Shown here: in pieces, positions 4,995-58,657 of the stretch
Layout of the letters: each line of letters opens with the position of its first letter
Numbering within the stretch: the first letter of the stretch is position 1
NCBI RefSeq assembly: GCF_020745735.1
Contig: NC_083412.1
Location: 59,486,320-59,550,319, forward strand
Length of the DNA stretch: 64,000 nucleotides
Direction of reading: 5' to 3'
Source: Hemiscyllium ocellatum
Taxonomy: Eukaryota
Made by a program: the position numbers and the translations under genes
Notes under the pieces: generated by a model
Told to the model about the DNA's origin: nothing
Seen by the model: the letters and a program-made list of their open reading frames with translations, nothing else
The model's database searches: none

Positions 4995-5110
4995 AGCTGT
5001 ATATCCCTATGACTCTATGAGTAAGTGATATAAAATTTATTTAAACAGAAGTTAATAAATATATATTGGAAGATTTGTTTTTAAATGTATTATTTTCATT
5101 CCTTATGCAG

Positions 5111-10392: not shown

Positions 10393-10485
10393 TATAATTT
10401 CTTTCAGGATGGCATGTTGAAAATCAGAAATTATTCATTTATACTGTTATTAGTTATTATAATAACCACTATTTTTTTTTCTTAG

Positions 10486-10773: not shown

Positions 10774-11241
10774 GTGAGTTTATTTCTGAGATCAATGTTG
10801 ATACTAAAGGTAACTTAAATTATTATATAAGTTGTGGAGAAGAAGCATGTTAATAAGCTGACCTTAGAAGCTGAGAAAGGACTATTCTGAATTTGTTTCT
10901 CTTTTAAATGTATTGGGTTGTATAAGATTTAGGGTTTGGAAGTCACAGATTATCCAAAATAAACAATTAAGAATTCATCAGCAATGTTAAGGTAGTTGAC
11001 TTATTTCTTAAGAAGCAATAATTTAGATGTGGTACATAACCTAATAGATAGAAAAAGATATACAACACATAACAGGTGAGAAAGATTGACTGGTACCAAA
11101 TGGGAATACTGGTTGGGGAAAGTATAGCAATGCTAATCTCCATAGCTGCTCAGAATAATGTACTGACCACAGATTGGACAATGGGATGGATGAAGCTGAG
11201 CTCCATAGCTGAAAGTGGTAGTCTCATCTGTTTGCCAACAG

Positions 11242-37489: not shown

Positions 37490-37526
37490 ATGGGCTCAGC
37501 TCTCAGGCTCTGGCTCTTCCTCTTGG
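37490..37526 (+). CDS. VJ-C1-ITIM receptor exon 1: leader MGSALRLWLFLL(G)
   Basis: ATG in good context (GGAACATGG), hydrophobic core, donor G|GTAAGG, phase 1, 95-bp intron to the V exon. Confidence 0.88.
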
Positions 37527-37621
37527 GTAAGGATTGCCTTTGATTCCAGGGAGCAATCATTGCAGTTAGACTCGGGCTCTGTGGAGATGATGTTCCCATT
37601 TGTTGTCACATTATGTTCCAG

Positions 37622-37957
37622 GGCCTGTTGTCCCTCTGGAAGTGATTGAGTCTCCTCCAGCTCTCTCCCTCCTGAGAGGGCAGACCGCTCGGATTAACTG
37701 CAGCCTGATACCGGGAGAGGAGCGGGCGGAGCTGGTGAGATATTATTGGTGTCGGGCAAGAGACAATCCTGACTTCAGCGGCAACGGATCCAGGAACTTC
37801 CTGCAAAACAGCCCTCGTGTGTCAGTGTCAGAGAGTTTCCTCATTATCCGGGAGCTGATGGTGAATGATTCTGACACTTACCGCTGTGTGGTTCTCAGAG
37901 AGAAACCTCGGCCCTGGAAATACTTCCAGGGAAATGGAACAACATTGAACATCCAAG
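37622..37957 (+). CDS. VJ-C1-ITIM receptor exon 2: germline-joined VJ-type IgV domain
   Basis: Acceptor TTATGTTCCAG, donor G|GTAATT; 336 bp; LEVIESPPALSLLRGQTARINC...YYW...FLIIRELMVNDSDTYRC...FQGNGTTLNIQ. Confidence 0.95.
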
Positions 37958-38002
37958 GTAATTGTGGAAGATCCGAAATATTCAGCAGGAAGGGCTGCAT
38001 CT

Positions 38003-38022
38003 GGAGAGAGAGAGAGAGAGAG
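38003..38022 (+). repeat. (GA)n microsatellite in the V-C1 intron
   Basis: Direct reading of GAGAGAGA run. Confidence 0.9.
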
Positions 38023-38413
38023 AAACAGGTCATGGGTCAGGTTGGTCAGAACTGGAAGAAGTTGGAGGTTTAATAGTTGAACAGTTTATCAAAGTGGTTT
38101 ATCTGAGCCGTGCCCCAGAGACAGCCTGACCTGCTGAGTGTTCCCAGAATCCGCGAGGTTTTGTTGCTGATTCAGTGTCTGGACAGAATAGACAGGGAGA
38201 GTCTATCCCCATGTCCCAAACCAAGCGGTACAGGTTCACATTGAAGATCATCCGAAACAGAGTCCACATATGGGCTCGGTTTTACCCGCACTGCCCCGGA
38301 CTGGGACAGAGACAGATTTCATCATGAATTTCAAAACATTCTGAAGAGAAACATTTCTCAGAGTTTCCGAATAAGGCGGCTGTCGAACCAGCAGGGACAC
38401 GATGGGCCAAATG

Positions 38414-38610
38414 TCAAGGTGAGAGTGGTGCTGGAAAAGCACAGCAAGTCAGGCAGCATCCGAGGAGCAGGAGAATCGACGTTTGGGACAAAAGCCCTTC
38501 AGCAGCCCTTCATGTCAGGCTCACTGAAGCTCCAGCCTGACCTGATGTGTTTTTCCAGCACCACTCTCATCTTGACTCTGACCCCCAGCATCTGCAGTCT
38601 TCACTTTCGC
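38414..38610. mobile_element. Fold-back Penelope-derived insertion with 16-bp TSD in the V-C1 intron
   Basis: CACGATGGGCCAAATG at 38398-38413 and 38611-38626; inverted arms TCAAGGTGAGAGTGGTGCTGGAAAA / TTTTCCAGCACCACTCTCATCTTGA. Confidence 0.85.
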
Positions 38611-39258
38611 CACGATGGGCCAAATGGCCTGGTTCTGTGCAGTGAGCTTTCTCTGAGAAGATGAAGGGAGAGTGAAATAACTCAATGTGTGAGAGAAGGA
38701 AACAGAAACAGTGCCCAGAATCACAGAGACAGAGCCCACACTGGGATGTTGTGTGGGAGCACAGGGTCTGCCCGGGGGTAACCTGGAATCTTACATTAAC
38801 CACCCACCAGCAACACCTGCTTTTCGATCGGATCCTTTCAGTCCCATCCTTTTCAACACTTAGTTTGAAGAAAACCACCCAAAAGACAAAGCTGAACCCG
38901 AAAGATCCGATTTCCAACAAGTATAATGCCAAATAAAACGAATATGGTCTTGGGAAAAAAATGTTTGTTTATCATTAACTGGGACATCCTGCTCCAAAAA
39001 AAACACAACCCCAGCGCGTGTCGGGACGAAACTGGGTCTCCCCGGTTCTCATTCTGACCCACATTGTGAGGAGGGATCTGTCTCCTGGTGTCGGTGATTT
39101 GGTAATCGGGGTACAATTTATTAAACCCATTCTGCACTGTCCCATTGAGTATCCAAGTTTCAGGCAGTTTTAACCATCCCTCTCCTTGCTACCTGCCGAT
39201 TTCTATTTGCTACAGTGAAGATTGACACAATGTGTGTTGTTTTGATGTGTTTATTTAG

Positions 39259-39558
39259 CGAAACCTGAAATCTATCTGACAGCGGATCCCCAGGATGAAG
39301 GTGTTGGGATACAGACACTGACTTGTTTGGCTGCGGGATTTTTCCCGAGGAATCTGACCATTTCCTGGATTGTTGAGGGGGATGTCTCCTACCAGGAGGA
39401 GCCGGGCTCGCTGACAGTAAACACGGACACCAGTTACAACCTGAGCTCCCGGCTGCGGATTGCAAAGCCCCAGCGGGAGCAGGGAGCCGCCGTCTCCTGT
39501 CACATTCAGCACAGCACCTTCACTGGGTCAGTGAGGACAAGGCTCAGAGCCAGTCCAG
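39259..39558 (+). CDS. VJ-C1-ITIM receptor exon 3: C1-set Ig domain
   Basis: Acceptor TTTATTTAG, donor G|GTAGGT; 300 bp; AKPEIYL...LTCLAAGFFPRNLTISW...TSYNLSSRL...VSCHIQHST has the C1 signature C..GF.P..I...W, Y.L.S.L, C.V.H. Confidence 0.95.
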
Positions 39559-40194
39559 GTAGGTGCCTCACTAATACTGACCACACCACAGGACTCCCAG
39601 TTATAGCCAAGGGGGCTGGAAAATTAACAATTCCATTATAAAACACGCAGTATTGGAGATAGAATAACAGGAAAGAGTCCTTAATTCGTTTCCGGGATAT
39701 CGATATCTGACCATTGATTGCCCATGGCTAATTGTCCATTGGACAGTTAAGAGTCAACCGCTTTCCTTTAGGTGTGGAGTCACATGTAGGTCAGACCAGG
39801 TAAGAACACTTTCCCTCCCGAAAGGCCATTAGATAGGGGTTTCTACAATCGGTACATCCTCATTAGACTCTTAATTCCAGATTTTGTTTTTCTTTGAATT
39901 CAAATTCCCCCAGTTGCCCAGGCAGGATTGGAATCCCGGGTCCCCCGAACATGACCTGGCTCTCTCGATGAGCAGCAGTGCAGTATGTTAGCCGTCTCGC
40001 AAGGCACTCTAAATTCCATTAAAATTAACAGGATGCTAACGCTGAATTTATTGGTAATGATCGGAAATAATGATGTGAATGGAAATGGGCAAAAAATAGC
40101 CCATCGGCTGGGGAGCCGGAGGTGGAAATCTCAAACATTGACCTTTCCCGTGGCACATCGTCACCGCCCTAGAATCGATTCGGAGATGTCGGTG

Positions 40195-40345
40195 TTGGAC
40201 TGGGGTGTACAAAGTTAAAAATCACACAACACCCAGGTCTTTCATCGGACAACCACCTGGTGATGGAGCAGCGCTCCGAAAGCTTGGCTTCCAAGTAAAT
40301 CTGTTGGACTATAACTTGGTGTTGTGTGATTTTTAACTCTGCGCT
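40195..40345. mobile_element. Fold-back remnant of a third Penelope-like family (C); another copy at about 43725-43850
   Basis: Inverted AAGTTAAAAATCACACAACACC / GGTGTTGTGTGATTTTTAACT arms; degenerate hammerhead-like GGAGCAGCGCTCCGAAAGCT. Confidence 0.65.
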
Positions 40346-43300
40346 CGAATTAACTTCCAACATTGTTTTTTATGGACTTTAATTCGGTCGAACAGGTGGG
40401 TTTGCTTCAGTCACCCTGTTAGAGCACACAATAACCTTGAGAAACATTAAAAAAACAGAAGGCAATTCCTAGCTAGTTTCCACCCTTTGTTTTCACACCG
40501 AGCTGTGTCAGAGAGCCCCTCTCTAAGCCACATTTCCAGAGCGGAATCGTTCCCTGCTCCCACACCAGGCGGCTCTCAGTGAAATGTCAGTATTGACTGA
40601 AGAGTAATTCTGGCTTCAGGAATGAAGAGAAAAGGAGCCGCCGGATACAGAACAGGCAGCGTTTATACAGCACTAACCAGAGGGGGAATTATAACTCTGT
40701 AACAGATGTCAGCAGGGCCACATTGACCCAGTTCATTCAGCAGGACCACTGCATTGCTGACAGAGTCACCATGACTTCAGGCCAGACAGGAATACAGGAG
40801 GAAAGGCGGGAATTACAGGGAATGGGAGAAAGTTCCGTCAAACTATCACGGCGACACAAGCAGTGGGCCGAATGGCCTCCTCCTGTGCTCCCATTTATGA
40901 TTCTCTTCAACAGCCACATGCCATTTAGCCGGTTGGCAGGTTCCCAGAGCGTGTGAATAGAATGAACCTGTTATATTCTGTGGGCGACAGCTATTGACAT
41001 CACCCCGCCGCTTCACTCTGTTCTAGGTGTGTACAGGCAGTGATCACAGCTCCTATTACACCACTGTCACTGGCCGGGTGGAGAATAGACCATCTATAAA
41101 TCCCTATTCACATGAGTTTCTTTGGTTCATTACCACAGACCGGTTGGGATTTTAGATGCAGGATCGTAGCCACAAGAAAAGGAAACCCATTCAGTCCATA
41201 CCCACAGCGTGGCTCCTATCCTTCCTTATTAAGGCTCAGGCAGTTAGGTTATCACCCGGATTCCCAAACTTCACCTTTTTGAAAAAAGACTGAGAGAAAG
41301 AAATATCCCTTGCCATGATCTTGAGATTTAAGGGAACGATTGCCAAAGAAACAGCGAGGGGACAGGTTGAAAACGTACAAATGGAGCTACGATCCAACAG
41401 CACCTTTGAAAACCGCTATGAGCCAAATTCTAGTGAGGATTTGCGTGTCAGGCAGAAGCTTAGAACAGGAAACTCATGACCAATTTAAAACTCTTGGAGA
41501 ATGAGTGTGCCGGGCATAGCTATAGACTGGCACTAGTTGGTTGTGGCACAATGTGTTTTTGGTGTGCGCCAAGGCAACAGTGTCATCCTCGCTCAGCAGA
41601 TTACAGAACCAAAATGCTGGAAATCTGATATGAAAACAGAAAATGCTGGCAATTTCTGAAAATGAGGTAGTGTCTCTGGAAAGGAGTCCAACATTGCAGG
41701 TGGTGATCTTTCATCAGAACACTAATGAGAGAGCAGGACTGTAGTGCCTTATTTGGGAATAGAAGTTTGGACGGGAGGAATTATAAAATATATTAATATG
41801 TTAATATGGGCTGTAGTAAATTATTCCCTCTTGGAGGCTGCCTTGGATGGTTTCTGTCTGCAAACTTCAGTATGCAGTTTGAAACCAATCTTGTTAAAAA
41901 TTTGCTATTTTGTGCTGCCATTAAAATAACGACCAGATCAAAAAGACTAAAAAAAACTGACCAACAAAGAAAAGCAGATATGTTGGTCCTAAATGTATGT
42001 CACTTGTCATGAAGTTGCAAGACTGTTGGTTAGGGAAGTGGCTTGTCCTAATAATCTGTAGCTCTATCAATCAAGTACAAATAAACAGTAACAGGGATGA
42101 TTTAGAAATTACAGAAGATGGATGTGAAGCCTGAAGGCACGAACTTTATTCTCAACAATATTTACCCAGTGCCTTTATTTCACTAAACCACTTGAAGCAC
42201 CTCCCAAAAGTCTTATCAGTCAAAATGTAACACTGAATCACATCTAAAAAATCAAATTTAATACATCATACCATCAACCTATTCTCTTTCCAAATCCAGG
42301 CAATTCTGCAACTGAAGCAATTAACATTCAGAAATAAAAAATATAGGTATTTCACAGTAAGTAGTACCGTTATAATCTCACGGAGGCCACAACTGCTTAG
42401 TGAGAGAAAGGGTCTTTGTATTTTGTGAACATGCTCCAAATACCTTTTCATGAAAATACAAATATAAACATCAGTATTTTTGCAGCTTATTTGTCATAAG
42501 TAACTTTGTTGGGAGGAACCGTAAAATAAACACACCTAGAAATGTAACAATCAGAAACGTTAAAAAGCCTTTCTTAGTTGATCACCTCCTGTTTGGAGCT
42601 AATAAAGAATGAAATAATTAATCTTTTGATTTTAGTTCTGTCTTTTAATTGTATTGGTTCTGACTGTCTCCAATTTCAACTTTCAAATTAAATGATCAAT
42701 TATATTGGCAATGTCCAATTTAAGTGAACTAGTTTAAATTTTCTTTTTGGACACAACTGGCAGTTAATAATAGTAACTGACAGTTTGAAACATTGATAGT
42801 TACCATGTCTGCATTGAAAACAAAATATTACAAATCATTTAAAAAAGTAACAGTACAGCTGTATTTCAACAAGTATATTAGGTGAGTTCTGAAAAAGGGT
42901 CACTGGACCCATAATGTTAACTCTGATTCCTCTCCACAAATACTGCCAGACCTGTTGGGTTTTTCCAGCAATTTCTATTTTTGTTTCTGATTTCCAACAT
43001 CTGCAGTTCCTTCGTATGTTTTTTAATTGGAGGAGGGATTGGGAAGAAAAGTAATGGAGGCACACCATGAAGTAAGTTTGAAATTGCCAATAATTTAAAT
43101 AGGTGCTCAATTTACACGGTCCACTTCCAGCCTGTGTAACTGCAGTGGAAAAAGAGGAGTGGGTTCAGTAAACGTTGTTAAACATCAGTTTTCTGCATGC
43201 AAATATGCATGGATGATTCGTTTATTTGTATCTCACCTTGGTAAACTTGTTAGTGGTCACAAAGAGTTTAGAGAATGGAGGTTTAGCAGGCTGACAGTTT

Positions 43301-43779
43301 TAAAAGTTATTTTTACTTAATCTGTATAGCTGTTCAGTGAAAATTGAAAATACTGTAAGAATATCTCTTAGGCTGTTGTGCATAACTATTTTCACAATAC
43401 ATTAAAGGGTAACATCTCCCCTTTATTTCAGTGAAATGATTCTATATGCTGACACAGTGAGATGTGACTTCCCTTCAGGCAGTGACAAAACTACTCATGA
43501 ATAGCATGATTGTAATGATAAAGACTCAATGATGGTATGGAGCTTGTCCTTCAATTAATAAATAATTTCTACACTTTTTGGGGAAATTTTAGTAGAAATG
43601 GGATAATGCATGTAATATTACTGTTACACAACTGGAACTAATTTTGGCATCATTTCTTAATGGCATTCTATTGGATGAAATCTATTTATCCATTTCACAC
43701 AGACAAGTCAACTCAAAAACTTCGAAGTTAAAAATCACACAACATCAGGTTATAGTCCAACAGGTTTAATTGGAAGCAT

Positions 43780-43808
43780 TAGCTTTCAGAGCGCCGCTCC
43801 TTCATCAG
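43780..43808 (-). ncRNA. Minimal hammerhead ribozyme-like motif (family C Penelope repeat)
   Basis: Minus strand reads CTGATGA-A-GGAGC(GGC)GCTCT-GAA-AGCT-A: palindromic AGCT stem III. Confidence 0.5.
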
Positions 43809-44033
43809 GTGGTTGTGGAGTACACAGTTGTAAGGCACAGAATTTATAGCAAAGAATTTATATCAAAAAAATTCAAGTGACAGATAATAAGTATATTTCT
43901 GATTTAACATGTAGGTTAGAGAATATAATTGAAAATTTGAATTTCAAAGTATTGCATATTGTGTAACCATTCTTGATCTTATTTGTAATTAATTATTATT
44001 AATGGTTTGAATTGTTTCAATTGTAATTTGAAG

Positions 44034-44138
44034 GTTTTTCTAAGTATTATTACCTCGGCCTGCTGAGTCTTATCCTTATTGTACCGTTTTGTCTTTGGAT
44101 CATAAAGAGTCAATGCTATAAACAGAAGAATGGAAAAG
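44034..44138 (+). CDS. VJ-C1-ITIM receptor exon 4: transmembrane exon (G)FSKYYYLGLLSLILIVPFCLWIIKSQCYKQKNGK
   Basis: Acceptor TTGTAATTTGAAG, donor G|GTAATC; 105 bp, phase 1-1; about 20-aa uncharged hydrophobic segment followed by a Lys-rich stop-transfer stretch. Confidence 0.8.
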
Positions 44139-44299
44139 GTAATCAGATTTTTTTAAATGGCTGAATATATTGCATTGAAAATAGTGCATAAGTATTACAT
44201 GAAATAATTCTAACAAAAATAACCATTGGAAAAATTCATATTCCACAGGCAATAAGAGCTCAGGATAACAGATAGTTAGCCATCTAGGAGAGCAGGAAA

Positions 44300-47200: not shown

Positions 47201-48990
47201 CTGGAAAAGTGCAGCAGGTCAGGCAGCATCCAAGGAGCAGGAGAATCGACATTTTGGGCATAACCCCTTCTTCAGGAATGAGGAAAGTGTGCCAAGCAGG
47301 CTAAGATGAAAGGTGGGGAGGAGGGACTTGGGGGAGGGGTGTTGGGAATGCGATAGGTGGAAGGAGGTTAAGGTGAGGGTGATAAGCCGGAGAGGGGCTG
47401 GGGGCGAAGAGGTCGGGAAGAAGATTGCAGGTCAAGAAGGCGGTGCTGAGTCCGAGAGTTGGGACTGAGATATGGTGGGGGGAGGGGAAATGAGGAAGCT
47501 GGAGAAATCTGGATTCATCCCTTGTGGTTGGAGGGTTCCTAGGTCGAAGATGAGGCACTCTCCTCCAGGCATCGTGTTGCCATGGTCTGGTGATGGAGGA
47601 GGCCAACACCTGGATGTCCTTGGCGGAGTTAAAGAGAGAGGGAGTTAAAGTGTTCTGCCACGGGGTGGTTGGGTTGTTTGGTGCGGGGGTCCCAGAGGTG
47701 TTCTCTGAAACGTTCTGCAAGTATGCGGTCTGTCTCCCCAATGTATAGGAGGCCACATTGGGTGCAGCGGATGCAGTAAATGATGTGTGTGGAGGTGCAG
47801 GTGAATTTGTGACTGATATGGAAGGATCCCTTGGGGCCTTGGAGGGAAGTGAGGTGGGAGGTGTGGGCGCAAGTTTTGCATTTCCTGCAGTTGCAGGGGA
47901 AGGTGCCAGGAATGGAGGTTGGGTTGGTGGGGGGTGTGGACCTGACGAGGGAGTCGTGGAGGGAGTGGTCTTTCCAGCACACTGATAGGGGAGGGGAGGG
48001 AAATATAGCCTTGGTGGTGGGGTCTGTCTGGAGGTGGCAGAAATGACGAAGGATGATACGATGTATCTGGAGATTTGTGGGGTGGTAGGTGAGGACCAGT
48101 GGGGTTCTGTCCTGATGGCGATTGGATGGGCAGGTTCAAGGGCGGGGGAGCGGGAAGTGGAGGAGATGCGGTGGAGAGCATCGTCAGCCATGCCACCACC
48201 AACCTCCAGATACTGCATCCGCTGCACCCGATGTGGCCTCCTATACATTGGGGAGACAAGCCGTCTACTTACAGAACGTTTCAGAGAACACCTCTGGGAC
48301 ACCCTCACCAACCAACCCAAACGCCCCGTGGCAGAACACTTTAACTCCCTCTCCCACTCTGCCAAGGACATGCAGGTCCTTGGCCTTCTCCATCGCCAGA
48401 CCATTGCAACACGACGCCTGGAGGAAGAGCACCTCATCTTCTGCCTCGGAACCCTCCAACCACAAGGGATGAATGCAGATTTCTCCAGCTTCCTCATTTC
48501 CCCCCGCCCACCTTATCTCAGTCCCAACCCTCAGACTCAGCACCGCCTTCTTGACCTGCAATCTTCTTCCCGACCTCTCCGCCCTCACCCCCTCTCTGGC
48601 CTGTCACCTTCACCTTAACCTCCTTCCACCTATAGCATTCCCAATGCCCCTCCCCCAAGTCCCTCCTCCCTACCTTTTATCTTAGCCCGCTTGGCACACC
48701 TTCCTCATTCCTGAAGAAGGGCTCATGCCCGAAATGTTGATTCTCCTGCTCCTTGGATGCTGCCTGACCTGCTGCGCTTTTCCAGCAATACATTTTTCAG
48801 CTCTGATCTCCAGTCCCCATTTCTCCTAGTGGATTCTGGAAAGGTCTCAACAAACTGGAAAATAGTCAACAAAGCTTCTCTGGCAAGAAAGGGAGGAAAA
48901 AGAAAATAAAACAGTACATGCCTATTGGCCTAACATCTGCCACAGGGTAAATACAAGATTCATTTCAATAAGTTGCAGCTCACACCTCAC
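44300..48990 (+). mobile_element. Old fragmented CR1 LINE, interrupted by an HE1 SINE (about 46752-47055) and a Penelope element
   Basis: ORFs 45425-45700 and 45731-46051 with DTKIGG, MEYNVGKCEV, QFWFPYL remnants. Confidence 0.7.
47184..48829. mobile_element. Large fold-back Penelope-like element with 14-bp TSD
   Basis: TGGATTCTGGAAAG at 47170-47183 and 48830-48843; minus-strand arm to about 48190, plus-strand arm from about 48205, about 600 bp mutually complementary; GIY-YIG region YCIRCTRCGLLYIGET. Confidence 0.9.
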
Positions 48991-49604
48991 CAGTACCTGG
49001 ATAAATGTTCTCAGAGAAAAACATGACAGTGGCTGTGGAAGATTTAAATTAAACTCACAGGGAAATGGGCAGCAGGATGCAAAAGTGGCAAAACAACATA
49101 ATGTACATTCACTGAGAATGATGGATAGAACCAGAGAGGAAGTGCTCCCATGTTGAATAGGAGATGACTAAGAAGGACTACAAGGAATACTATGACATTT
49201 TGAATGCCCACACTTAAAAAGGCAAAGTCTAGTCAATAATGTTGATGAGCCACAAGCACAAGCTGTGTGAGAATTTGATGTATTGGCAATAACAAACATG
49301 GCTTATAAACTGTGAGGACTGGCTACAAAATATTCAAGGAGAAAGAGTGTTCAAAAATATATGAAAGGGAGGCAAGGCAATGGCACTGGGTCAGGAAGAC
49401 ATCTTAGTCTTGGAGACAGAGGGTAGAATGTATTTGCATTGAATTGAGAAGTTAGAAAGGTATGACGTGTGCATTTTCTTACCCAGGGTGATTGTCCAAA
49501 TTGACCAAGAAGTTGCGATTATAGGCTACTTTTATGGTTGAATTTCATTTATAGGTACCATTGTACTTCATAGTAAGACAGTTCTAACATTGAAATACTT
49601 ACAG

Positions 49605-49663
49605 ATTCATCATCCCATGGTAAAGATGTTGATGATCAAGTAATGGAAAAATCAGAATGTGCA
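49605..49663 (+). CDS. VJ-C1-ITIM receptor exon 5: cytoplasmic linker (D)SSSHGKDVDDQVMEKSECA
   Basis: Branch-like TTCTAAC then TTACAG acceptor, donor GTAAGT; 59 bp, phase 1 to 0, exactly bridging the TM exon (phase 1) and last exon (phase 0). Confidence 0.7.
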
Positions 49664-52375
49664 GTAAGTAGATTGTTTTGATATATTCCTTCACTTAACT
49701 TGAGCTACGCTCCACTGAGCTGAAACTATTATAAAGTATTATCAGTTAAATAAATCAGTTGTGAACATGCTGCATTAGGAACACAAAAATAGCGTAAGGT
49801 TTAGGATTCACTTCATTTGTAAGGTGTAAGTCAATTGCAATCGTATGTTTATGCTAAGTAACCTGTTCAAATATTTTATTACACACCTCGGAAGCAGGTG
49901 GGACTCAAACTCACCTCCTGACTCAGAGGGAGAGACATCACCACTGCACCGTTAGAGTCCTTAATTACAATTAAAGGCTGAGTCAACAGAGTAACTTAAA
50001 AGGTTAACTAATCTTAGTTACTTACAAGATCAATTCAGACACAAACATTTTTCTTAAGTTTCACAGAATTTGTTAATCTTATCAAGACATAGATAAAAGT
50101 AACATTACTCAACAAAAGCAGCATTGTCAATCAATTGCTTACTGCCTGTGATCTGTCTCCTTTGGTTCAAGCTCTTACCTCAAAGCATTTTCACATTTGT
50201 TATGCTGCATTTAAATAAGCTTGGACCCTTAAACAACAACAAAAGCCGGAAAGCATTGATCTTACCTTGACTGGAACATAGGAATATTCTTATGTTTTAC
50301 AGAAGTATTTTTACAGATAGCCATATCAAATAGAATATAATTTCATTCCTGACTTAGAGTCATAGAATCACAGAGATGTACAGCATGGAAACAGATCCTT
50401 TGGTCCACATCGTCCATGCCGACCAGATATCCGAACTTAATCCAGTCCTATTTGCTAGCACTTGGTACATATCTGTCTAAACTCTTCCTATTTATATTCC
50501 CACACAGATACCTTATAAATGTTGTAATTGCACCAGTCTCCTCTGGCAGTTTGTTCCATACACATCAATACTCTTTGCCCCTTCAGTCCCTTTTAAATCT
50601 ATGCCCTCTAGTTCTGGACTCCCACACCCCACAGAGAAGACGTTGTCTACTTAGCCTGTCCATGCTCCTCATGAGTTTATAAACCTCTGTAAGATCAGCC
50701 CTCAGTCTCTAGCGCTCCGGGGAAAACAGCACAAAGCCATGTTGACTATCCCTAATCAGTCTTTGCCTTTCCAAATACATGTACATCCTGTCCCTCAGGA
50801 TTCCCTCCAACAACTTGTCCACCACTGATGTCATGCTCACTGGTCTATAGCTCCTTGGGGTTTCTTAACCCCTTTCTTAAAAAAAAGGGCACCATGTTAG
50901 CCCATCTCCAGTCTTCCGGCACCTCACCTGTGACTATTGATGATATAAATATATCAGCAATGGGTTCAGTAATCACCTCCCTAGCTTCCCACAGAGTTCG
51001 AGGGTACACCTGATCTGGTCCTTGGATTTATCCACCTTTATGCCATTCAGCACCTCCTCTTCTGTAATATGGACACTTTTCAAGATGTTACCATCTATTT
51101 CCCCACATTTTAAATCTTCCATGTCCTTCTCCACAGTGAACACTGATGCAAAATACTTGTTTATTATCGCTCCCATCTCCTGTGGTTCCACCAATAGGCC
51201 GCCTTGCTGGTCTTTGAAGGGTCTTATTCTCTCCCTAGATACCTTCTTATCCTTAATGTATTTATAAAACCCCTTTGGATTCTCTTAACCCTATTTGCCA
51301 AAGTTATCTCCACTTTTTGCCCTCCTGATTTCCCTCTTAAGTATACTCCTGTTGCCTTTATATTCTTCTAAGGATTCACTCGATCTCTCCTGTCTATACC
51401 TGACATATGCTTCCTTCTTTTTCTGAACCAAAACATCAATTTTTCTAGTCATCCAGCATTCCCTACACCTACCAGCCTTTCCTTTCACCCTTACAGGAAT
51501 ATATTTTCTCTGGACTTTCGTTATCTCATTTTTGAAGGCTTCTCATTTTCCAGCCGTCCCTTCACCTGCGAACATCTGCCCCCAATCAACTTTTAAAAGT
51601 TCTTGCCTAATGCCGGCAAAATTGGCCTTCCTCCAATTTAGATCTTCAACTTTTAGATCTGGTCTATCCTTTTCCATCACTATTTTAAAACTAATAGAAT
51701 TATGGGTCGCTGGCCCTAAAGTGCTCCCCCACTGACACCTCAGTCACCTGCCCTGCCTTATTTCCCAAAAGTAGGTCAAGTTTTGTACCTTCTCTAGCTG
51801 ATATATCCACATACTGAATCAGAAATTTTCTTGTACATATCTAACAAATTCCTCTCCATCTAAATCTTTAACATTGTGGCAGTCCCAGTCTGTGTATGGA
51901 AAGTTAAAATCCCTGTCATAACTTATAGATAACTGAGATTTACAAATTTATTTTTCAATTTTCTGTTGATTATTGGAGGGGTCTATAATACAATCCAAAT
52001 AGGGTGATCATCCCATTCTTATTTCTCAGTTCCACCCAAATAACCTTCCTAGTATTGCTAGGAATATCCTCCCTAAGTACGGCCACAACCCTCATCAAAA
52101 ATGCCATTTACTCATATCTCTTGCCACACCGTCTATTCTTCCTATAGCATTTGTCTCCTGGAACATTAAGCTACCATTCCTGTTCATCCCGGAGCCACGT
52201 CTCTGTAATTGCTATGGTATTCCAGTCCCATTTTCCTAACCATGCCCTGGGTTCATCTGCTTTCCCCTGTTAGGCTTCTTGCATTGAAATAAATACAGAT
52301 TAATTTATCAGTCCTACCTTGTTAGATTAGATTACCGACTTTTAGATTACCAACAGTGTGGAAACAGGCCCTTTG

Positions 52376-52970
52376 GCTGAAAATGTGTTGCTGGTTAAAG
52401 CACAGCAGGTTAGGCAGCATCTCAGGAATAGGGAATGCGACGTTTCGAGCATAAGCCCTTCATCAGGAATGAGAGAGAGTAGCCAAGCAGGCTAAGATAA
52501 AAGGTAGGGAGGAGGGACTTGGGGGAGGGGTGATGGAGGTGGGATAGGTAGAAGGAGGTCAAGGTGAGGGTGATAGGCCGGAGTGGGGTGGGGGCGGAGA
52601 GGTCAGTAAGGAGATTGCAGGTTAGGAGGGCGGTGCTGAGTTGAGGGAACCGACTGAGACAAGGTGGGGGGAGGGGAAATGAGGAAACTGGAATGTAGTT
52701 CGGAGTCCGTGTGGGATCAGTCGGTTCCTTAGGCAGGTGCTGAGGAAGGAGATGTGGCTGAGGTAACGAGTCTGTTTGAGAACGTGGCTGAAGAGTTTCT
52801 GTGCAGAGGAGATGACCTGGGGGGTGCAGTGAGAGAGAGACTCACTGAAATCCTTGTAGAGGGAGGAAGAGAGCTTCTTCAAGGAAGGCATCCTTGCAAG
52901 AGGATTCGCAGTAGGTTAAAATCTTCGAGTAAAAAATGAGGTCTGCAGATGCTGGAGATCACAGCTGAGA
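52376..52970 (-). mobile_element. Non-autonomous Penelope derivative: end of upstream terminal repeat, ORF start, downstream terminal repeat
   Basis: ORF 52622-52891 MPSLKKLSSS...HISFLSTCLRNRLIPHGL; CTGATGA hammerhead-like motif on the minus strand at about 52439-52466. Confidence 0.75.
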
Positions 52971-52974
52971 CCCT

Positions 52975-53215
52975 CTGAAGAGCAACCCACCCAGACCCAT
53001 TTCCCTAAATCATGCACCTAACACTATGGGCAATTTAGTATGGTCAATTCACCTAACCTGGACTGTGGGAGGAAACCGGAGCACCCGGAGGGGACCCATG
53101 CAGACACGGGGAGAATATGCAAACTCCACACAGACAGTTGCCCAAGGCAGGAATTGAACCCAGGTTCGTGGCGCTGTGAGGCAGCAGCGCTAACCATCGA
53201 GCCACCGTGCCGCCC
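52975..53215 (-). mobile_element. HE1-type SINE; its tail lies at about 52322-52375, separated by the Penelope derivative
   Basis: GGCGGCACGGTGGCTCGATGGTTAGCGCTGC head on the minus strand. Confidence 0.85.
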
Positions 53216-53417
53216 CATGTTCTCTGCTTTGTCTCTGCCTACCCTGACTGTTTGACTCGCTCCTTTTCCCAACTGTACCTGTCTCAGACTGATCTCTTTC
53301 CTCACTATTTCCCTGGGTTCCACACACCCCACCTTACTAGTTTAATTCCTTCCAAGCAGCTCTTGCAAATCTCCCTGTCAGTATATTAGTCCCCTTCCAA
53401 TCCAGGTGCAATCTATC

Positions 53418-53715
53418 ATTAGATTACATTACAGTGTGGAAACAGGCCCTTCGGCCCAACAAATCCACATGCGACCCGACCCGCATACCCCTACATTTAC
53501 CCCTTACCTAACACTATGGGCAATTTAGCATGGCCAATTCACCTGACCTGCATATCTTTGAACTGTGGGAGGAAACAGGAGCACCCAGAGGAAACCCACG
53601 CAGACACGGGGAGAACGTGCAAATTCCACACAGTCAGTCGCCTGAGGCAGGAATTGAACCCGGGTCTCTGGCGCTGTGAGGCAGCAGTGCTAACCACTGT
53701 GCCACCATGCCGCCC
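53418..53715 (-). mobile_element. HE1-type SINE
   Basis: GGCGGCATGGTGGCACAGTGGTTAGCACTGC head on the minus strand; TAGATTACATTACAGTGTGG tail. Confidence 0.88.
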
Positions 53716-56396
53716 ACTTATCCTTCTTATACAAGTCACTTCTACCCTAGAAGAGATTCTAATGGTTCAAAAATGTGAACCTTTCTCCCCTGCACCAGCT
53801 CCTCAGGCACACATTGATCTGCTCTATCCTCCTATTCCTACCCACACTGGCTTGTACCACCATGAATAATCCAGATATTACTATCCTTGATGACCTCTTT
53901 TTTAAATTCCTGCCCAACTTCTTATATTCTCCCTTCAGACTCTCACCCTTTGTCCTTCCTATGTCATTAGTTCCAATGTATACAATGACCTCCTGCTGGT
54001 CCCTCTCCCATTTGAGTATATTCTGCACTCTGTCCAAGATATCCTTGATCCTGGCACCTGGTAGACAACACACCATTCTGATTTCTCGCTATTGGCTGCA
54101 GAAACATCTGTCTGTGTCTCTGACTAAAGAATCCCCCATCACAGTTGATCTCGTGAAACCTGACGTACCCTCATTACATTAGAGCCAGACTTGGTACCAG
54201 AAACATGGCTGTTCGTGCTACATTCCCCAAAGAGTCCATCACTCCACATGTTTTCCGAAACAGCATACCTGTTTGAGAAGCTGATAACAGCAGGAGACTC
54301 CTTCATGACCTGCCTCCCTCTCCTATCCTTCCTGGAGGTAACCCATCTACCTGACTGTATCTGCAGTTTTTCTCCCTTCCTATAAGCGCCATCCATCACA
54401 CCTCCTAACTCCTGTAAATTCCTCATTGCCTCTAACTGCTACTCCAACTGATCCATGTAATCTGACAGGATTCACAAACAAAGACATAATAATCATACAT
54501 ACATAATAATCAGTAATATGGAAATTTTCCCTAATCTCACAGATCCAACATGAAGAGCACATCATTCTACTAAAGGCCATCTTTTTACCTTAACAATCTA
54601 CAGACCCAGAAAATAGCACAGTCTTACTGCTCTAAAAAAACACTGCTCCAAGATAACTCATTATAAATGTTTTATATTTTCAAATATTAATCAAGGGACA
54701 GAGCTCAATAAAATATATAATCAAAAAGGAGCCACTTCACTCACTATTGCAGATTTACAAAAAAAAAGACAGCTTGCTTACATTTAAAAACCATGCACTT
54801 AGCTGCTCCTATGCTGTGAGCTCTCCCACACAGATTCCTCCAAGGTTAGCTGTGATTTTGCTGTTAGTTAATTTTACTTCGATTCACTCCAACGTCCAGA
54901 GATACTTGAACTCAAATAGCAAATCCTTCAAAATGTACTCATTGATTTCAATGAGATTTGACTGCCTAGGGTAAAATCCCGAACTGTTATTGCGTTCCTT
55001 TAAATAATACTGGGAGCAACATCTATTGAACTGTTGCTCTGCTGAGTGTGCCACACCCAAGATTAGTACAAGAATCCATCAACAAATTATCATTGACAGC
55101 TTTCCATCCACGGAAGATGGTGAACATACAGCAAACAAATTCACACTTTTGCTCATGGCTGAAGAAGTTAATCCTCAAGAGTTCTGTCTCATATTCAACT
55201 GAATACTAGTATAGGTTGTTTTGCAGTATTGGTGTTGTTGTCAAGCTGCTGTAATAACCATTGGTCATTGTAGCACTTCACAGAAGGTGTTGCCATTTTC
55301 CAGTATTATTAGCTAGTGATTCCCTGGTGCAATATTCTCGAGCCTTCAGGTCATACTGGTAATCATTCTTGATGTGGAGCTTTGAACCTCTTGTTGGTTG
55401 ATTGGTATCACGATTCTCATCAGAAAGAAAATTCTTGGTCATACAACTGTCTTTCACACTCTGAATTTGCCCGGCAATCCAATCATGTCACCCATGGTTG
55501 ATGATTGTTGCAAACCTGCAAACTGTTTTTGAGGTTACTGTTATGTTCGTGACTTAGCTGCAAGTGGTCTGTGTTTCGCAGCCATGATAGATAGACCCAA
55601 GCACACATCAATATGTACAAAAACAAACTTCTGTAAAATGATGAATCATGAATTTCAAAAAGTCTTCGTTTTATTTGGCTCTCTGCATACTTGAGATAAA
55701 TAATAACGTGATTGTTCATTCACACTTCCACAACAGTGCCTGAGATTTATGTCCTGCCTAACTAATGATCCAATTTATTGAAGTAGGAATGTAACCATGA
55801 ACAAATCAGTAATTTTTGTAAACATCAGTTTTCATTCTACTATTCCTGGAGACATTTAATTGCACCCAAATATCAAAGTACATGTCATGTAAATTCAACA
55901 TAATATTGCTTGACTAAGGAGGGCGTGATGATGGTGATGTTCATCAGGCAAGTGTCTGCACGTACATATATGCACATGTACTTTACTCACTAAGTATTCA
56001 AGAATATAAACCTTTCTCTGCCCCTATGACAGTAACATTCAATTAAATTGCACTATTTCAGTTGCTACCAGCTAAAAATGAGGATATTGCAAGTAAAATC
56101 TTCTACAGTATGGATGATTGAACATAGGATGATGCTTTCTCAAGTATCCAACACTAAATTAGTGGCAAGAAAGTGTGATTGAAGTAAATTTTGCCTCCAT
56201 TGCATATTGAATACTTGGCAGATTATTTAACATTTGGAAGAGTAATTGATTATAATACATTAACAGTAAATGCAAGAGAAACTCAATTGGTTTGGCAGCA
56301 TCTGTGGAGAGAGAAACAGAGTTAACATTTTGAGTCAGAGGAAGGTGGATGCTCCTTGCAAGAGTTAGAAATCCAGCAGGCTGGGCATCATGCAAT

Positions 56397-58040
56397 TATG
56401 GCTGCAAATGTGTTGCTGGTCAAAGCACAGCAGGCCAGGCAGCATCTCAGGAATAGAGAATTCAACGTTTCGAGCATAAGCCCTTCATCAGGAATGAGAG
56501 AGAGTAGCCAAGCAGGCTAAGATAAAAGGTGGGGAGGAGGGACTTGGGGGAGGGGCGATGGAGGTGGGATAGGTGGAAGGAGGTCAAGGTGAGGGTGATA
56601 GGCCGGAGTGGGGTGGGGGCGGAGAGGTCAGGAAGAGGATTGCAGGTTAGGAGGGCGGTGCTGAGTTGAGGGAACCGACTGAGACAAGGTGGGGGGAGGG
56701 GAAATGAGGAAACTGGAGAAATCTGAATTCATACCTTGTGGTTGGAGGGTTCCCAGGCGGAAGATGAGGCGCTCCTCCTCCAGCCGTCGTGTTGTTATGT
56801 TCTGCCGGTGGAGGAGTCCAAGGACCTGCATGTCCTCGGTGGAGTGGGAGGGAGAGTTAAAGTGTTGAGCCACGGGGTGATTGGGTTGGTTGGTCCGGGC
56901 GGCCAGGAGGTGTTCTCTGAAGCGTTCAGCAAGTAAGCGGCCTGTCTCCCCAATATAGAGGAGGCCACATCGGGTGCAGCGGATGCAATAGATGATGTGT
57001 GTGGAGGTCTAGGAAGGGGAGGGAGGAGTCTGAGACAGTCCAGGTGAATTTCAGGTCGGGATGGAAGGTGTTAGTAAAGTTGATGAACTGTTCAACCTCC
57101 TCGTGGGAGCACGAGGCAGCGCCGATACAGTCATCGATGTAGCGGAGGAAAAGGTGGGGGGTGGTGCCAGTGTAGTTGCGGAAGATGGACTGTTCCACAT
57201 ATCCTACGAAGAGGCAGGCATAGCTGGGGCCCATGCGGGTGCCCATGGCAACTCCTTTAGTTTGGAGGAAGTGGGAGGATTGAAAAGAGAAGTTATTCAG
57301 GGTGAGGACCAGTTCAGTCAGTCGAAGGAGGGTGTCAGTGGAAGGGTACTGGTTGGTGCGGCGGGAAAGGAAGAAGCGGAGGGCTTTGAGTCCTTCGTGA
57401 TGGGGGATGGAGGTGTACAGGGACTGGATGTCCATAGTGAAAATAAGGCGTTGGGGACCGGGGAAGCGAAAATCCTGGAGGAGGTGGAGGGCGTGGGTGG
57501 TGTCCCGAACGTAGGTGGGGAGTTCTTGGACTAAAGGGGACAGGACCGTGTCGAGGTATTGGGAGATGAGTTCGGTGGGGCAGGAGCAGGCTGAGACAAT
57601 GGGTCGGCCGGGGCAGGCAGGTTTGTGGATTTTGGGCAGGAGGTAGAAACGGGCGGTGCGGGGTTGTGGGACTATGAGGTTGGAGGCGGTGGATGGGAGA
57701 TCCCCTGAGGTGATGAGGTCCTGGATGGTCTGGGAGATGATGGTTTGGTGGTGGGAGGTGGGGTCATGGTCAAGGGGGCGATAAGAGGAGGCGTCCGCGA
57801 GCTGGCGTTTGGCTTCAGCGGTATACAGGTCAGTGCGCCAAACTATCACCGCGCCTCCCTTGTCTGCGGGTTTGATGGTGAGGTTGGGATTGGAGTGGAG
57901 GGAGTGGAGGGCTGCATGTTCTGAGGGTGAGAGGTTGGAGTGGGTGAGAGGGGTGGACAGGTTGAGTCGGTTAATGTCACGGTGGCAGTTGGCTATAAAG
58001 AGGTCGAGGGCGGGTAGGAGGCCAGCACGGGGTGTCCAAC
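56397..58040 (-). mobile_element. Young Penelope-like element: long RT ORF, internal deletion, endonuclease C-terminus and terminal repeat
   Basis: ORF 56926-58056 with KPADKGGA, RFYLLPKIHK, GRPIVS, GVAMGTRMGPSYA, RYIDD; CTGATGA hammerhead-like motif at about 56463-56490. Confidence 0.93.
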
Positions 58041-58405
58041 CATACTTTAAAAACAAGGTTCATTTTGCAAAGGTGTGGACAATTCATTAGTCTGGACTTG
58101 GCACTGGCAATTTAACCAGAGATGGGCTGATTGAATGCCAACCAATGGTTTCAGAGAAGTGTAAATCAGGATTGTTAAGAGGCCAATATGAGTATCGTCC
58201 ATACACCAAAGTCAGAAATCTATTTTAATTGCTTGTTTTTGAAAATTTGCTATTGATATTGGAATATTGATATTTCTATGTGGCTATGAATTATCAAACA
58301 GGAAGACAAGATTCATGCTAACTTAGTATCAAACCATAAATTGAAATGTCCTCATTTTTAATTCATCTTGTATTCTTATTTCTGTTTCTTGTTCCTATGT
58401 TACAG

Positions 58406-58657
58406 GATAATATTTCTCTCAGCAATGAAACTCTTCATTATGCATCTGTTCATGTCAAAACTCTTCCAAAATCGAAACAAAAACAGGAATTGAAAAGACC
58501 AGAGCAGGGCCAGACAACAGAATATGCCGTTCTAAAGGTCAAAGATAAAAATAATCAATTCTACAGAGATTACTCAGTTGCCAGCATTTGCCCCACATCA
58601 AACATAAAGCAAACTGCTAACTACATAGGAACCACATACGCTTCTCTTAAGAAATGA
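58406..58657 (+). CDS. VJ-C1-ITIM receptor exon 6: tail with LHYASV (ITIM), TEYAVL and TTYASL (ITSM-like)
   Basis: Long polypyrimidine tract ending TTACAG at 58405; phase 0; 83 codons to TGA; motifs at 58433-58450, 58517-58534 and 58631-58648; spliced CDS totals 1089 bp (362 aa plus stop) with no internal stop. Confidence 0.85.
   Translation, partial: DNISLSNETLHYASVHVKTLPKSKQKQELKRPEQGQTTEYAVLKVKDKNNQFYRDYSVASICPTSNIKQTANYIGTTYASLKK

What the first reader, a model, noticed from the sequence alone, without database searches (positions are those of the whole stretch)
37490..58657. Complete non-rearranging VJ-C1 receptor with an ITIM/ITSM tail
Seen: six GT-AG exons with matching phases (1-1-1-1-0) splice into an uninterrupted 362-aa ORF: leader, V domain whose G strand carries a J-like GNGT motif in the same exon, C1-set domain, uncharged TM, linker, three-tyrosine-motif tail. 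The leader-V intron is only 95 bp, as in Ig/TCR V genes, and no RSS interrupts V and J. Established: C1 domains are confined to a few jawed-vertebrate families (Ig, TCR, MHC, B2M, tapasin, SIRP, B7-H6), and a germline VJ-C1 gene is the proposed substrate for the RAG transposon insertion. Inference: an inhibitory, antigen-receptor-like molecule of cartilaginous fish, either a one-C1 SIRP-like receptor or a member of a poorly described VJ-C1 lineage. The ORF track shows only fragments; three exons are invisible to it.
Basis: partly seen in the sequence, partly recalled or inferred. Interest (0 to 1): 0.88.

Follow-up and report, generated by a model that had tools for sequence, protein, structure and literature searches.

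The report
Shark SIRP-like inhibitory VJ-C1 receptor
This is a real epaulette-shark gene for a small antibody-like surface receptor with an inhibitory tail; it is already in RefSeq as "SIRP-alpha-like", is conserved in sharks and rays, and lies in a B7/TTF2 immune gene neighbourhood rather than at the SIRP locus.

Summary
The six GT-AG exons (phases 1-1-1-1-0, 95-bp leader intron) splice into a 362-aa ORF. That ORF is residue-for-residue identical to the RefSeq model [quoted passage not shown] of Hemiscyllium ocellatum, so the gene is real but already annotated.

Orthologues with the same layout occur in at least 12 sharks and rays (45-79% identity). No relative closer than about 32% was found outside elasmobranchs.

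The V exon carries an in-exon J-like GNGT and no RSS. The second domain is clearly C1-set. The TM is uncharged. The tail has one ITIM and two ITSM-like motifs, and a fourth tyrosine motif kept in other sharks is degenerate here.

The "SIRP" label rests on architecture. SIRP-alpha is only narrowly the best whole-protein match. The V-domain profile matches TCR V-alpha/delta, VNAR and IgL V better than any SIRP V, and there is one C1, not two. The neighbours are a VTCN1-like B7 gene and, next to a 95%-identical tail-less twin, a TTF2-type helicase, as at human 1p13.1.

Best reading: the inhibitory member of a conserved paired-receptor family, a new member of a known kind. Other agents of this scan noted similar VJ-C1-ITIM genes elsewhere in this genome and followed up the twin.

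The parts
37490..37526 (+). Exon 1: ATG and first part of the split leader (12 codons + 1 nt)
   Evidence: GT donor; identical to the RefSeq model P0055
37527..37621 (+). 95-bp leader-V intron (split-leader arrangement as in Ig/TCR/UrIg V genes)
   Evidence: the split leader is described as canonical for antigen-receptor genes in PMC12227049
37622..37957 (+). Exon 2: end of leader plus complete V-set domain with germline-joined J-like G strand
   Evidence: Pfam V-set 35.1 bits. Family V profile best matches TCR V-alpha 39.9, V-delta1 38.9 and VNAR 38.7 bits. No RSS.
37930..37941 (+). J-like G-N-G-T motif (also an N-glycosylation sequon, N117)
   Evidence: the G strand is interrupted at residues 116-118 in the AF2 model; G116 and T119 are invariant in the family
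39259..39558 (+). Exon 3: single C1-set domain (C147, W161, C205-x-x-x-H209)
   Evidence: Pfam C1-set 48.9 bits; atlas features 0.96 to C1-set clusters; PDB matches to Ig CH, UrIg2 and SIRP C1 domains
44034..44138 (+). Exon 4: stalk and uncharged transmembrane helix (residues 228-256) with conserved Pro
   Evidence: AF2 helix 228-256; conserved in orthologues; the homologous exon is present in the Narcine locus L001
49605..49663 (+). Exon 5: 59-nt cytoplasmic linker that shifts the phase from 1 to 0
   Evidence: present in the RefSeq model and aligned in orthologues
58406..58657 (+). Exon 6: cytoplasmic tail with tyrosine motifs and stop codon
   Evidence: predicted disordered
58433..58450 (+). 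ITIM L-H-Y-A-S-V (Y291)
   Evidence: Y291 is invariant in alignment A1
58517..58534 (+). ITSM-like T-E-Y-A-V-L (Y319), followed by the conserved KVKDKNN
58565..58582 (+). Degenerate fourth motif R-D-Y-S-V-A (Y335); an ITIM (VxYSxV) in Stegostoma, Scyliorhinus and Heptranchias
58631..58648 (+). C-terminal ITSM-like T-T-Y-A-S-L (Y357)
5059..5529 (+). Context, not part of the gene: open frame containing the IgV exon of an upstream B7-family gene
   Evidence: Pfam V-set 55.8 bits. Best single-domain PDB match is VTCN1/B7-H4 at 67.1 bits; CD276 gives 38-42 bits per domain.
10398..10850 (+). Context: open frame containing the IgC exon of the same B7-family gene
   Evidence: Pfam C2-set_3 (butyrophilin-type IgC) 53.6 bits; PDB matches BTNL8, BTN3A and CD276

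Best explanation
The locus encodes a functional type I membrane glycoprotein. It is the ITIM-bearing (inhibitory) member of an elasmobranch-wide pair of non-rearranging VJ-C1 receptors. Shown: the gene structure, the domain identities, conservation across sharks and rays, the uncharged TM, the conserved tyrosine motifs, and the existence of a tail-less or charged-TM counterpart gene next to a TTF2-type helicase gene. Inferred mechanism: the membrane-distal V domain binds a still unknown ligand on other cells. Src-family kinases then phosphorylate Y291, Y319 and Y357 (plus a fourth tyrosine in other species). The phosphotyrosines, spaced as pairs, recruit tandem-SH2 phosphatases (SHP-1/SHP-2) and damp activation. 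The counterpart, with a near-identical ectodomain and, in rays, an Arg in its TM, would signal through an ITAM adaptor. In function this is what SIRP-alpha and SIRP-beta do. In ancestry it is more likely a separate VJ-C1 lineage sitting in the VTCN1-TRIM45-TTF2 region (human 1p13.1 equivalent) than a SIRP orthologue.
For: The model is identical to RefSeq P0055. There are full-length orthologues at 45-79% identity in Stegostoma, Mustelus, Scyliorhinus, Heptranchias, Heterodontus, Cetorhinus, Pristis, Hypanus, Mobula, Narcine and Hemitrygon. The V, C1, TM and tail exons lie in the same order in Narcine DNA. V-set and C1-set are both above Pfam thresholds. The AF2 model gives V + C1 + TM helix + disordered tail. 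LHYASV, TEYAVL and TTYASL are conserved, and a fourth VxYSxV motif occurs in other sharks. Paired partner: P0061 on the same chromosome has a 95% identical ectodomain and no ITIM tail. The ray proteins P0069 and P0062 have a conserved Arg-containing TM and no tail. P0061 and P0069 both abut a GRF-zinc-ribbon/SNF2 helicase gene. In the ectodomain tree the tail-less/activating-type forms group with the ITIM forms of their own lineage (99/98 and 95/94 support), the pattern expected of homogenised paired receptors. Whole-protein look-alikes are led by SIRP-alpha.
Against: No expression or splicing data were available to me. The RefSeq model is itself a prediction, and the one probable cDNA-derived fragment (P0022) could not be traced to a contig. 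Phosphatase recruitment and ligand binding are inferred from motifs only. The annotated epaulette-shark twin P0061 ends without a recognisable TM, so its 'activating' nature rests on the ray proteins and on another agent's note. The lineage-specific clustering could also come from repeated duplication rather than gene conversion.
Confidence: 0.8

Rival explanations
1. It is a true orthologue of tetrapod SIRP-alpha that has one C1 domain instead of two, either because it lost one or because tetrapods gained one. The RefSeq name would then be correct.
For: SIRP-alpha is the top solved-structure match for the whole protein (74.8 bits, colinear from V strands F-G through the first C1). It is the top reviewed-protein fold match (E 1.7e-16) and the nearest cluster by language-model features (0.96). 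The ancestral tail has four tyrosine motifs in two pairs, which, from memory, resembles SIRP-alpha. The family has an activating-type partner like SIRP-beta. Rays have two C1 domains (P0003, P0053).
Against: The margins are small: IgA scores 65.8 and UrIg2 65.1 bits, and nectin, TAPBPR, CD200R, the B7s and TCR-beta lie within 3-4 logs. The family V profile finds TCR V-alpha/delta, VNAR and IgL V but no SIRP V among the best 60. The SIRP-alpha alignment covers only the last strands of the V domain. The two C1 domains in rays are near-identical recent duplicates, not the diverged d2/d3 of SIRPs. The neighbours are a VTCN1-like B7 gene and TTF2, as at human 1p13.1 (PMC11565109), not the SIRP cluster, which from memory lies at 20p13. 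No tetrapod SIRP was retrieved by any homology search, though that tool has limited sensitivity.
Confidence: 0.2
2. It is a third relic of the non-rearranging antigen-receptor precursor family, kin of UrIg (MHC-linked) and UrIg2 (linked to Ig/TCR). It was retained on the chromosome-1-type MHC paralogon and later acquired an ITIM tail.
For: UrIg2 is first or second among solved structures for the C1 exon and the C1 profile (67.8 and 121.8 bits summed) and aligns colinearly from V to C1. The V profile is closest to rearranging antigen-receptor V domains. It has a split leader with a short intron and a single VJ exon, as described for UrIg and UrIg2. It is linked to B7 and, according to scan notes, NCR3-like genes, which are classic proto-MHC markers.
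Against: Per domain, UrIg2 scores 16.8-26.9 bits, no better than IgG CH3 or IgA (29.7-32.6 bits), so its high rank is a sum over three domains. The UrIg2 V domain is not among the best 60 V matches. UrIg is secreted with three C domains and UrIg2 has about nine; both are disulfide-linked dimers without ITIMs. No conserved interchain cysteine is seen here. Membership of 1p13 in the MHC paralogon is from memory and was not tested.
Confidence: 0.15
3. The V exon derives from the neighbouring NKp30/NCR3-type VJ family and was joined to a C1 exon by exon shuffling, so the gene is an NCR3 relative rather than a SIRP or UrIg relative.
For: The nearest V-domain relatives outside the family are VJ-only ITIM receptors of frogs, a newt and a turtle (P0005, P0045, P0026, P0017, P0040, P0070). 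Scan notes s1-203494 and s1-203673 place an NCR3-like gene about 37 kb upstream. The paddlefish relative P0012 is auto-named after the NKp30 ligand.
Against: No NKp30 chain appears among the best 60 solved-structure matches of the V profile. None of the non-family relatives is named NCR3. I did not see the NCR3-like gene myself.
Confidence: 0.1
4. The model is a prediction artefact or an unexpressed pseudogene.
For: Only computational models were available; introns 3-5 are long (4.5-8.7 kb) and full of retroelement debris.
Against: The ORF is intact, and the same six-part protein is predicted independently in more than ten species with conserved TM and tyrosine motifs. The exon order is conserved in Narcine DNA. 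The uninterrupted fragment P0022 spans V to tail.
Confidence: 0.03

Closest known systems
SIRP-alpha / SIRP-beta (signal-regulatory proteins; PDB 2wng, 4i2x; UniProt P78324)
   Same: Both have an N-terminal V domain with a germline J-like G strand followed by C1-set domain(s), a single-pass uncharged TM, and a multi-tyrosine ITIM-type tail. Both families are paired with a tail-less, charged-TM partner with a near-identical ectodomain. SIRP-alpha is the best whole-protein match in PDB, AFDB/Swiss-Prot and the atlas.
   Different: There is one C1 rather than two. The V domain does not retrieve SIRP V domains. The gene lies between a VTCN1-like B7 gene and the TTF2 region, not at a SIRP-type locus. 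No CD47-type ligand information exists. Identity is only about 16% over the structural alignment.
UrIg and UrIg2 (non-rearranging shark VJ-C1 genes; PMC12227049; PDB 9dmx)
   Same: All are elasmobranch-restricted, with a single-exon VJ, a split leader, C1-set constant domain(s), and linkage to MHC-type gene neighbourhoods. UrIg2 is among the top C1 matches.
   Different: UrIg has three C domains and is secreted by the liver. UrIg2 has about nine C domains. Both are disulfide-linked homodimers with no ITIM. This gene has one C1, an inhibitory tail and a paired partner.
Ig light chains and TCR alpha/delta chains
   Same: They share the V-J-C1 two-domain layout. Light chains dominate the fold matches, and TCR V-alpha/V-delta, VNAR and IgL V give the best V-profile scores.
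   Different: V and J are joined in the germline with no RSS. The tail is its own long signalling tail, and there is no charged TM for CD3 or Ig-alpha/beta association.
NKp30/NCR3 and amphibian/reptile multi-VJ ITIM receptors
   Same: All have a non-rearranging VJ domain with a GxGT motif. The unnamed frog and turtle VJ-ITIM proteins are the nearest V relatives outside the family. Scan notes report an NCR3-like gene nearby.
   Different: Those proteins lack a C1 domain. From memory, NKp30 is activating with a charged TM.
PRARP (non-rearranging IgSF genes of chicken, Fu et al. 2019, cited in PMC10751288)
   Same: It is cited as a non-rearranging VJ gene family regarded as a remnant of an antigen-receptor precursor. 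The alligator V-J-C1-TM-LIYADL protein P0071 (53.5 bits to the family profile) might belong to it.
   Different: This could not be compared: the paper is not held and no PRARP sequence was available.

Membership tests
SIRP family | N-terminal V-set domain with germline J-like motif | tested here: met
   V-set 35.1 bits; GNGT in the same exon and no RSS; G-strand bulge in the model
SIRP family | Two diverged membrane-proximal C1-set domains (d2, d3) | tested here: not met
   There is one C1 exon and no second C1-like exon anywhere in the window. Rays have two, but they are near-identical recent duplicates.
SIRP family | V domain groups with SIRP V domains | tested here: not met
   The family V profile finds TCR V-alpha/delta, VNAR and IgL V, with no SIRP chain in the best 60. 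The single V exon finds no SIRP at E<=0.01. A formal tree was not possible.
SIRP family | Cytoplasmic tail with four tyrosines in ITIM-type motifs (alpha form) | tested here: inconclusive
   There are three consensus motifs here and four in other sharks. Homology, as opposed to convergence, with SIRP-alpha tails could not be tested because no SIRP tail sequence was retrievable.
SIRP family | Paired activating member with basic residue in TM and no ITIM | tested here: met
   P0069 and P0062 (rays) have a conserved Arg in the TM and no tail. P0061 in the same shark has a 95% identical ectodomain.
SIRP family | Conserved synteny with the tetrapod SIRP cluster | tested here: not met
   The neighbours are a VTCN1-like B7 gene and a TTF2-type helicase beside the twin. 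This matches human 1p13.1. The SIRP cluster's position at 20p13 is from memory.
SIRP family | Binds CD47 | not testable with these tools
   This needs binding assays.
UrIg/UrIg2 family | Single-exon VJ with split leader, non-rearranging | tested here: met
   feature as described in PMC12227049
UrIg/UrIg2 family | Three or more C1-type domains; disulfide-linked homodimer | tested here: not met
   There is one C1 and no conserved extra ectodomain cysteine. Dimerisation itself was not tested.
UrIg/UrIg2 family | V and C domains cluster with UrIg/UrIg2 in trees | tested here: inconclusive
   UrIg2 ranks high only by summed score. Its per-domain scores of 16.8-26.9 bits compare with 29.7-32.6 for IgG/IgA CH3. 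Its V domain is not in the best 60.
Ig C1-set domain (Pfam PF07654) | Score above the gathering threshold and better than C2/I-set models | tested here: met
   48.9 bits against a cut-off of 21; C2-set_2 gives 20.3; atlas 0.96 to C1-set clusters
Rearranging antigen receptors (Ig/TCR) | V and J separated by RSS-flanked DNA | tested here: not met
   V and J are continuous in one exon, with no heptamer or nonamer.
Paired inhibitory/activating receptor systems | Two linked genes with near-identical ectodomains and opposite signalling ends | tested here: met
   The physical distance in this genome (about 99 kb) comes only from scan note s1-191580.

The most novel reading that the evidence does not exclude
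This pair is a third, previously undescribed lineage of non-rearranging VJ-C1 genes, alongside UrIg (MHC) and UrIg2 (Ig/TCR complex). It would have been retained in elasmobranchs on the chromosome-1-type MHC paralogon, between TTF2/TRIM45 and a B7-H4-like gene. That would place a VJ-C1 gene on a third descendant of the proto-MHC, and hence before both whole-genome duplications. Its ligand may be the adjacent B7-family protein, in the manner of NKp30 and B7-H6. From memory, the receptor of mammalian B7-H4 is unknown, so this would give a candidate class for it.
Probability: 0.15. Interest if true: 0.8.

Novelty: new member of a known kind. Interest (0 to 1): 0.5.

Why it matters
Non-rearranging genes that join a VJ-type variable domain to a C1 constant domain are the proposed raw material for antibodies and T-cell receptors. 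The published shark examples (UrIg, UrIg2) are presented as rare survivors. This family shows that elasmobranchs keep at least one more such gene pair. It is wired as an inhibitory/activating receptor system and sits beside B7 genes and, according to scan notes, NCR3-type genes, in a region matching human 1p13.1. It gives comparative immunologists a concrete extra taxon for V and C1 phylogenies, a test of whether SIRP-like paired receptors predate bony vertebrates, and a candidate receptor to try against the neighbouring B7 ligand. It is not a new principle: the gene is already in RefSeq, and its design matches the SIRP-type paired receptors.

Tried and rejected
1. I could not obtain genuine SIRP, Ig, TCR or UrIg sequences for domain trees. 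All three word-indexed homology searches returned only the elasmobranch family plus two reptile proteins, so no formal V or C1 phylogeny against named families was possible. I used profile-versus-PDB rankings instead.

2. The C1 profile ranking is dominated by multi-C1 heavy chains because scores are summed over domains, so it is uninformative about the nearest family.

3. Fold searches do not discriminate between families. TM-scores are low because of the interdomain angle and the disordered tail.

4. A weak Pfam DUF4578 match recurs in four of eight tails (20-25 bits, below the cut-off of 27). I could not find out what that family is, so I drew no conclusion.

5. I tried to trace P0022, a probable cDNA-derived fragment, and also P0012 and P0002, to contigs. 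None is on record.

6. The PRARP paper and the first UrIg paper are not held.

7. I tested whether the B7 neighbour of the elephant-shark relative P0024 is the same B7 gene as in this window. It shows only 28% identity, so it is a different B7 paralogue and not evidence of an orthologous locus.

8. Epaulette-shark DNA outside the window could not be fetched. TRIM45, the NCR3-like gene and the twin's TM exon were therefore not seen by me.

Full report
OBSERVATION.
I spliced the six proposed exons mechanically. Every acceptor is AG and every donor is GT. The exon lengths are 37, 336, 300, 105, 59 and 252 nt, which gives phases 1-1-1-1-0. The joined 1089 nt translate without interruption into 362 aa plus a stop. 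The leader-V intron is 95 bp, and the other introns are 1301, 4475, 5466 and 8742 bp. The J-like GNGT lies inside the V exon at 37930-37941, 14 residues after the YxC cysteine. Neither the V exon nor its flanking introns contain an RSS heptamer or nonamer.

Pfam calls the V exon V-set (35.1 bits, cut-off 26). It calls the next exon C1-set (48.9 bits, cut-off 21), with the C2-type model below threshold. Language-model features agree on C1-set. No other V- or C1-like exon of this family exists in the window.

An AlphaFold model built on a 23-sequence alignment has two confident beta-sandwiches. Its G strand is interrupted exactly at G116-N117-G118, the TM helix runs from 228 to 256, and the tail is disordered.

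THE GENE IS REAL AND ALREADY ANNOTATED.
An exhaustive HMMER search with the V exon found only about five representatives clearly above the generic V-set background. One of them, a 367-aa catshark protein, aligns end to end with the spliced product at 61% identity. Searching with that protein returned named RefSeq models. Its annotated CDS spans 21,168 bp, exactly 37490-58657.

Orthologues are annotated in Stegostoma (79%), Mustelus, Scyliorhinus, Heptranchias, Heterodontus, Cetorhinus, Pristis, Hypanus, Mobula, Narcine and Hemitrygon. Their automatic names vary: SIRP-alpha-like, SIRP-beta-1-like, Ig kappa-like, TCR-beta-like and Ig heavy chain Mem5-like. In Narcine genomic DNA the V, C1, TM and tail exons lie in the same order. 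The TM, the motifs LHYASV and TEYAVL-KVKDKNN, and the C-terminal TTYASL are conserved. Other sharks carry a fourth motif (VDYSTV, VQYSAV or VHYSTV), which has decayed to RDYSVA in the epaulette shark.

WHAT FAMILY?
Three word-indexed searches found nothing closer than the elasmobranch family itself, even at E<=10 for the ectodomain. More distant colinear V-C1-TM proteins exist:
- paddlefish P0012, 32% identity, auto-named B7-H6-like or tapasin-related;
- elephant shark P0024 and sawfish P0035, about 30%, a separate paralogous lineage with 100/100 support;
- alligator P0071, V-J-C1-TM with LIYADL.

The nearest V-only relatives are unnamed VJ-ITIM proteins of frogs, a newt and a turtle.

Against solved structures, SIRP-alpha is the best whole-protein match at 74.8 bits. 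It is followed closely by IgA (65.8), UrIg2 (65.1) and SIRP-gamma (65.0), and the SIRP-alpha alignment covers only the last V strands plus the first C1. A profile of the family's V domains matches TCR V-alpha (39.9 bits), V-delta1 (38.9), shark VNAR (38.7) and light-chain V domains. No SIRP or NKp30 chain is in the best 60.

The C1 exon matches IgG/IgA CH3 (29.7-32.6 bits per domain) at least as well as the UrIg2 domains (16.8-26.9). UrIg2's top rank is a sum over three domains.

Fold searches put light chains first in the PDB. Among reviewed proteins SIRP-alpha comes first (E 1.7e-16), with nectin, TAPBPR, CD200R, the B7s and TCR-beta within a few logs. Language-model features put SIRP-alpha clusters first at 0.96.

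My reading is that the "SIRP" label reflects overall architecture. The V domain is antigen-receptor-like and the C1 is a generic, deep-branching C1. I could not fetch SIRP, Ig, TCR or UrIg sequences to make the trees that would settle this.

GENOMIC CONTEXT.
Upstream on the same strand lie two Ig exons of a B7-family gene. The V exon lies within 5059-5529. Its best single-domain match is VTCN1/B7-H4 at 67.1 bits, against 38-42 bits per CD276 domain. The butyrophilin-type IgC exon lies within 10398-10850. The rest of the window is retroelement debris.

A second gene on the same chromosome, P0061, has a 95% identical ectodomain and no ITIM tail. It abuts a 1218-aa GRF-zinc-ribbon/SNF2/helicase-C gene. 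From memory, that architecture is TTF2's. In Mobula hypostoma the tail-less relative P0069 abuts the same kind of gene. P0069 and Hemitrygon P0062 share a conserved TM with an embedded Arg.

Human 1p13.1 carries PTGFRN-CD101-TTF2-MIR942-TRIM45-VTCN1 within 200 kb (PMC11565109). Notes from other agents of this scan are leads I did not verify. They place the twin about 99 kb upstream between TTF2 and TRIM45, with an NCR3-like gene just downstream of TRIM45. The locus therefore looks like the shark equivalent of human 1p13.1 and not the SIRP cluster, whose position at 20p13 I give from memory. The elephant-shark relative P0024 also sits beside a B7-type gene, but that gene is a different B7 paralogue with 28% identity.

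PAIRED RECEPTOR.
In a maximum-likelihood tree of V-C1 ectodomains, the tail-less or activating-type forms group with the ITIM forms of their own lineage. Hemiscyllium P0061 groups with P0055 (99/98), and Hemitrygon ACT groups with Hypanus INH (95/94). Yet the position beside the helicase gene is shared by a shark and a ray. The simplest account is an old gene pair whose V-C1 exons are homogenised, as in other paired receptors. Repeated duplication is the alternative.

MECHANISM (inferred).
The V domain engages a ligand. The tyrosines of the ITIM and ITSM-like motifs are phosphorylated and recruit SHP-type phosphatases. The twin signals positively through an adaptor bound by its TM arginine. 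None of this was testable here.

LITERATURE.
UrIg and UrIg2 are the published non-rearranging VJ-C1 genes of elasmobranchs. They are presented as retained only there (PMC12227049; PMC10751288). Neither paper mentions SIRP-like or ITIM-bearing VJ-C1 genes, and full-text searches found no description of this family. PRARP (Fu et al. 2019) is a possibly related family that I could not read.

VERDICT.
The gene is a new, so far uncharacterised member of a known kind: non-rearranging, SIRP-like paired IgSF receptors. It is already present in RefSeq under an automatic name. Its antigen-receptor-like V domain and its position in a B7/TTF2 neighbourhood give it moderate interest for the origin-of-antigen-receptor question.

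Noticed in passing
window 5059-5529 and 10398-10850 (+): There is a B7-family gene upstream on the same strand. Its IgV exon is nearest VTCN1/B7-H4 (67 bits) and its IgC exon is of the butyrophilin/CD276 type. The leader and TM exons were not located. Scan note s1-203674 reports a leader exon 5.7 kb before the window start that may belong to it.
   Followed up: partly
window 58565-58582 (+): A fourth tyrosine motif, an ITIM (VxYSxV) in Stegostoma, Scyliorhinus and Heptranchias, has degenerated to RDYSVA in the epaulette shark, with a 3-residue deletion just before it.
   Followed up: yes
window 58406-58657 (+), residues 269-325 of the protein: A sub-threshold Pfam DUF4578 match (20-25 bits, cut-off 27) recurs in four of eight family tails. 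I could not establish what that family is.
   Followed up: partly
window 37930-37941 (+): The J-like GNGT is also an N-glycosylation sequon (N117) on the G-strand bulge. The Asn is present in some family members and replaced by Glu or Lys in others, so a glycan at the would-be V-V dimer face is not conserved.
   Followed up: partly
window 2652-5006 (-), 27242-29234 (-), 25278-26696 (-), 47304-48512 (-), 56631-58059 (-), 61112-62580 (+): There are several reverse-transcriptase-bearing retroelement fragments (RVT_1 up to 121 bits), some with GIY-YIG-like ends suggestive of Penelope-type elements. They fill the intergenic DNA and introns 4 and 5.
   Followed up: partly
L001 27415-27667 (Narcine bancroftii): The tail exon of the electric-ray orthologue matches in two different reading frames (27415-27564 and 27587-27667). 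A frameshift or assembly error therefore removes the last tyrosine motif from the annotated protein P0004.
   Followed up: no
P0003 (Hypanus) and P0053 (Mobula birostris): Ray orthologues carry two near-identical C1 domains in tandem. This is a recent exon duplication reminiscent of the C-exon duplications described for UrIg2, IgW and IgNAR.
   Followed up: partly
L002 24222-26594 (Callorhinchus milii): The elephant-shark V-C1-TM relative P0024 is followed 7.6 kb downstream by a B7-type gene (V-set + C2-set_3). It is a different paralogue from the one in this window (28% identity).
   Followed up: yes
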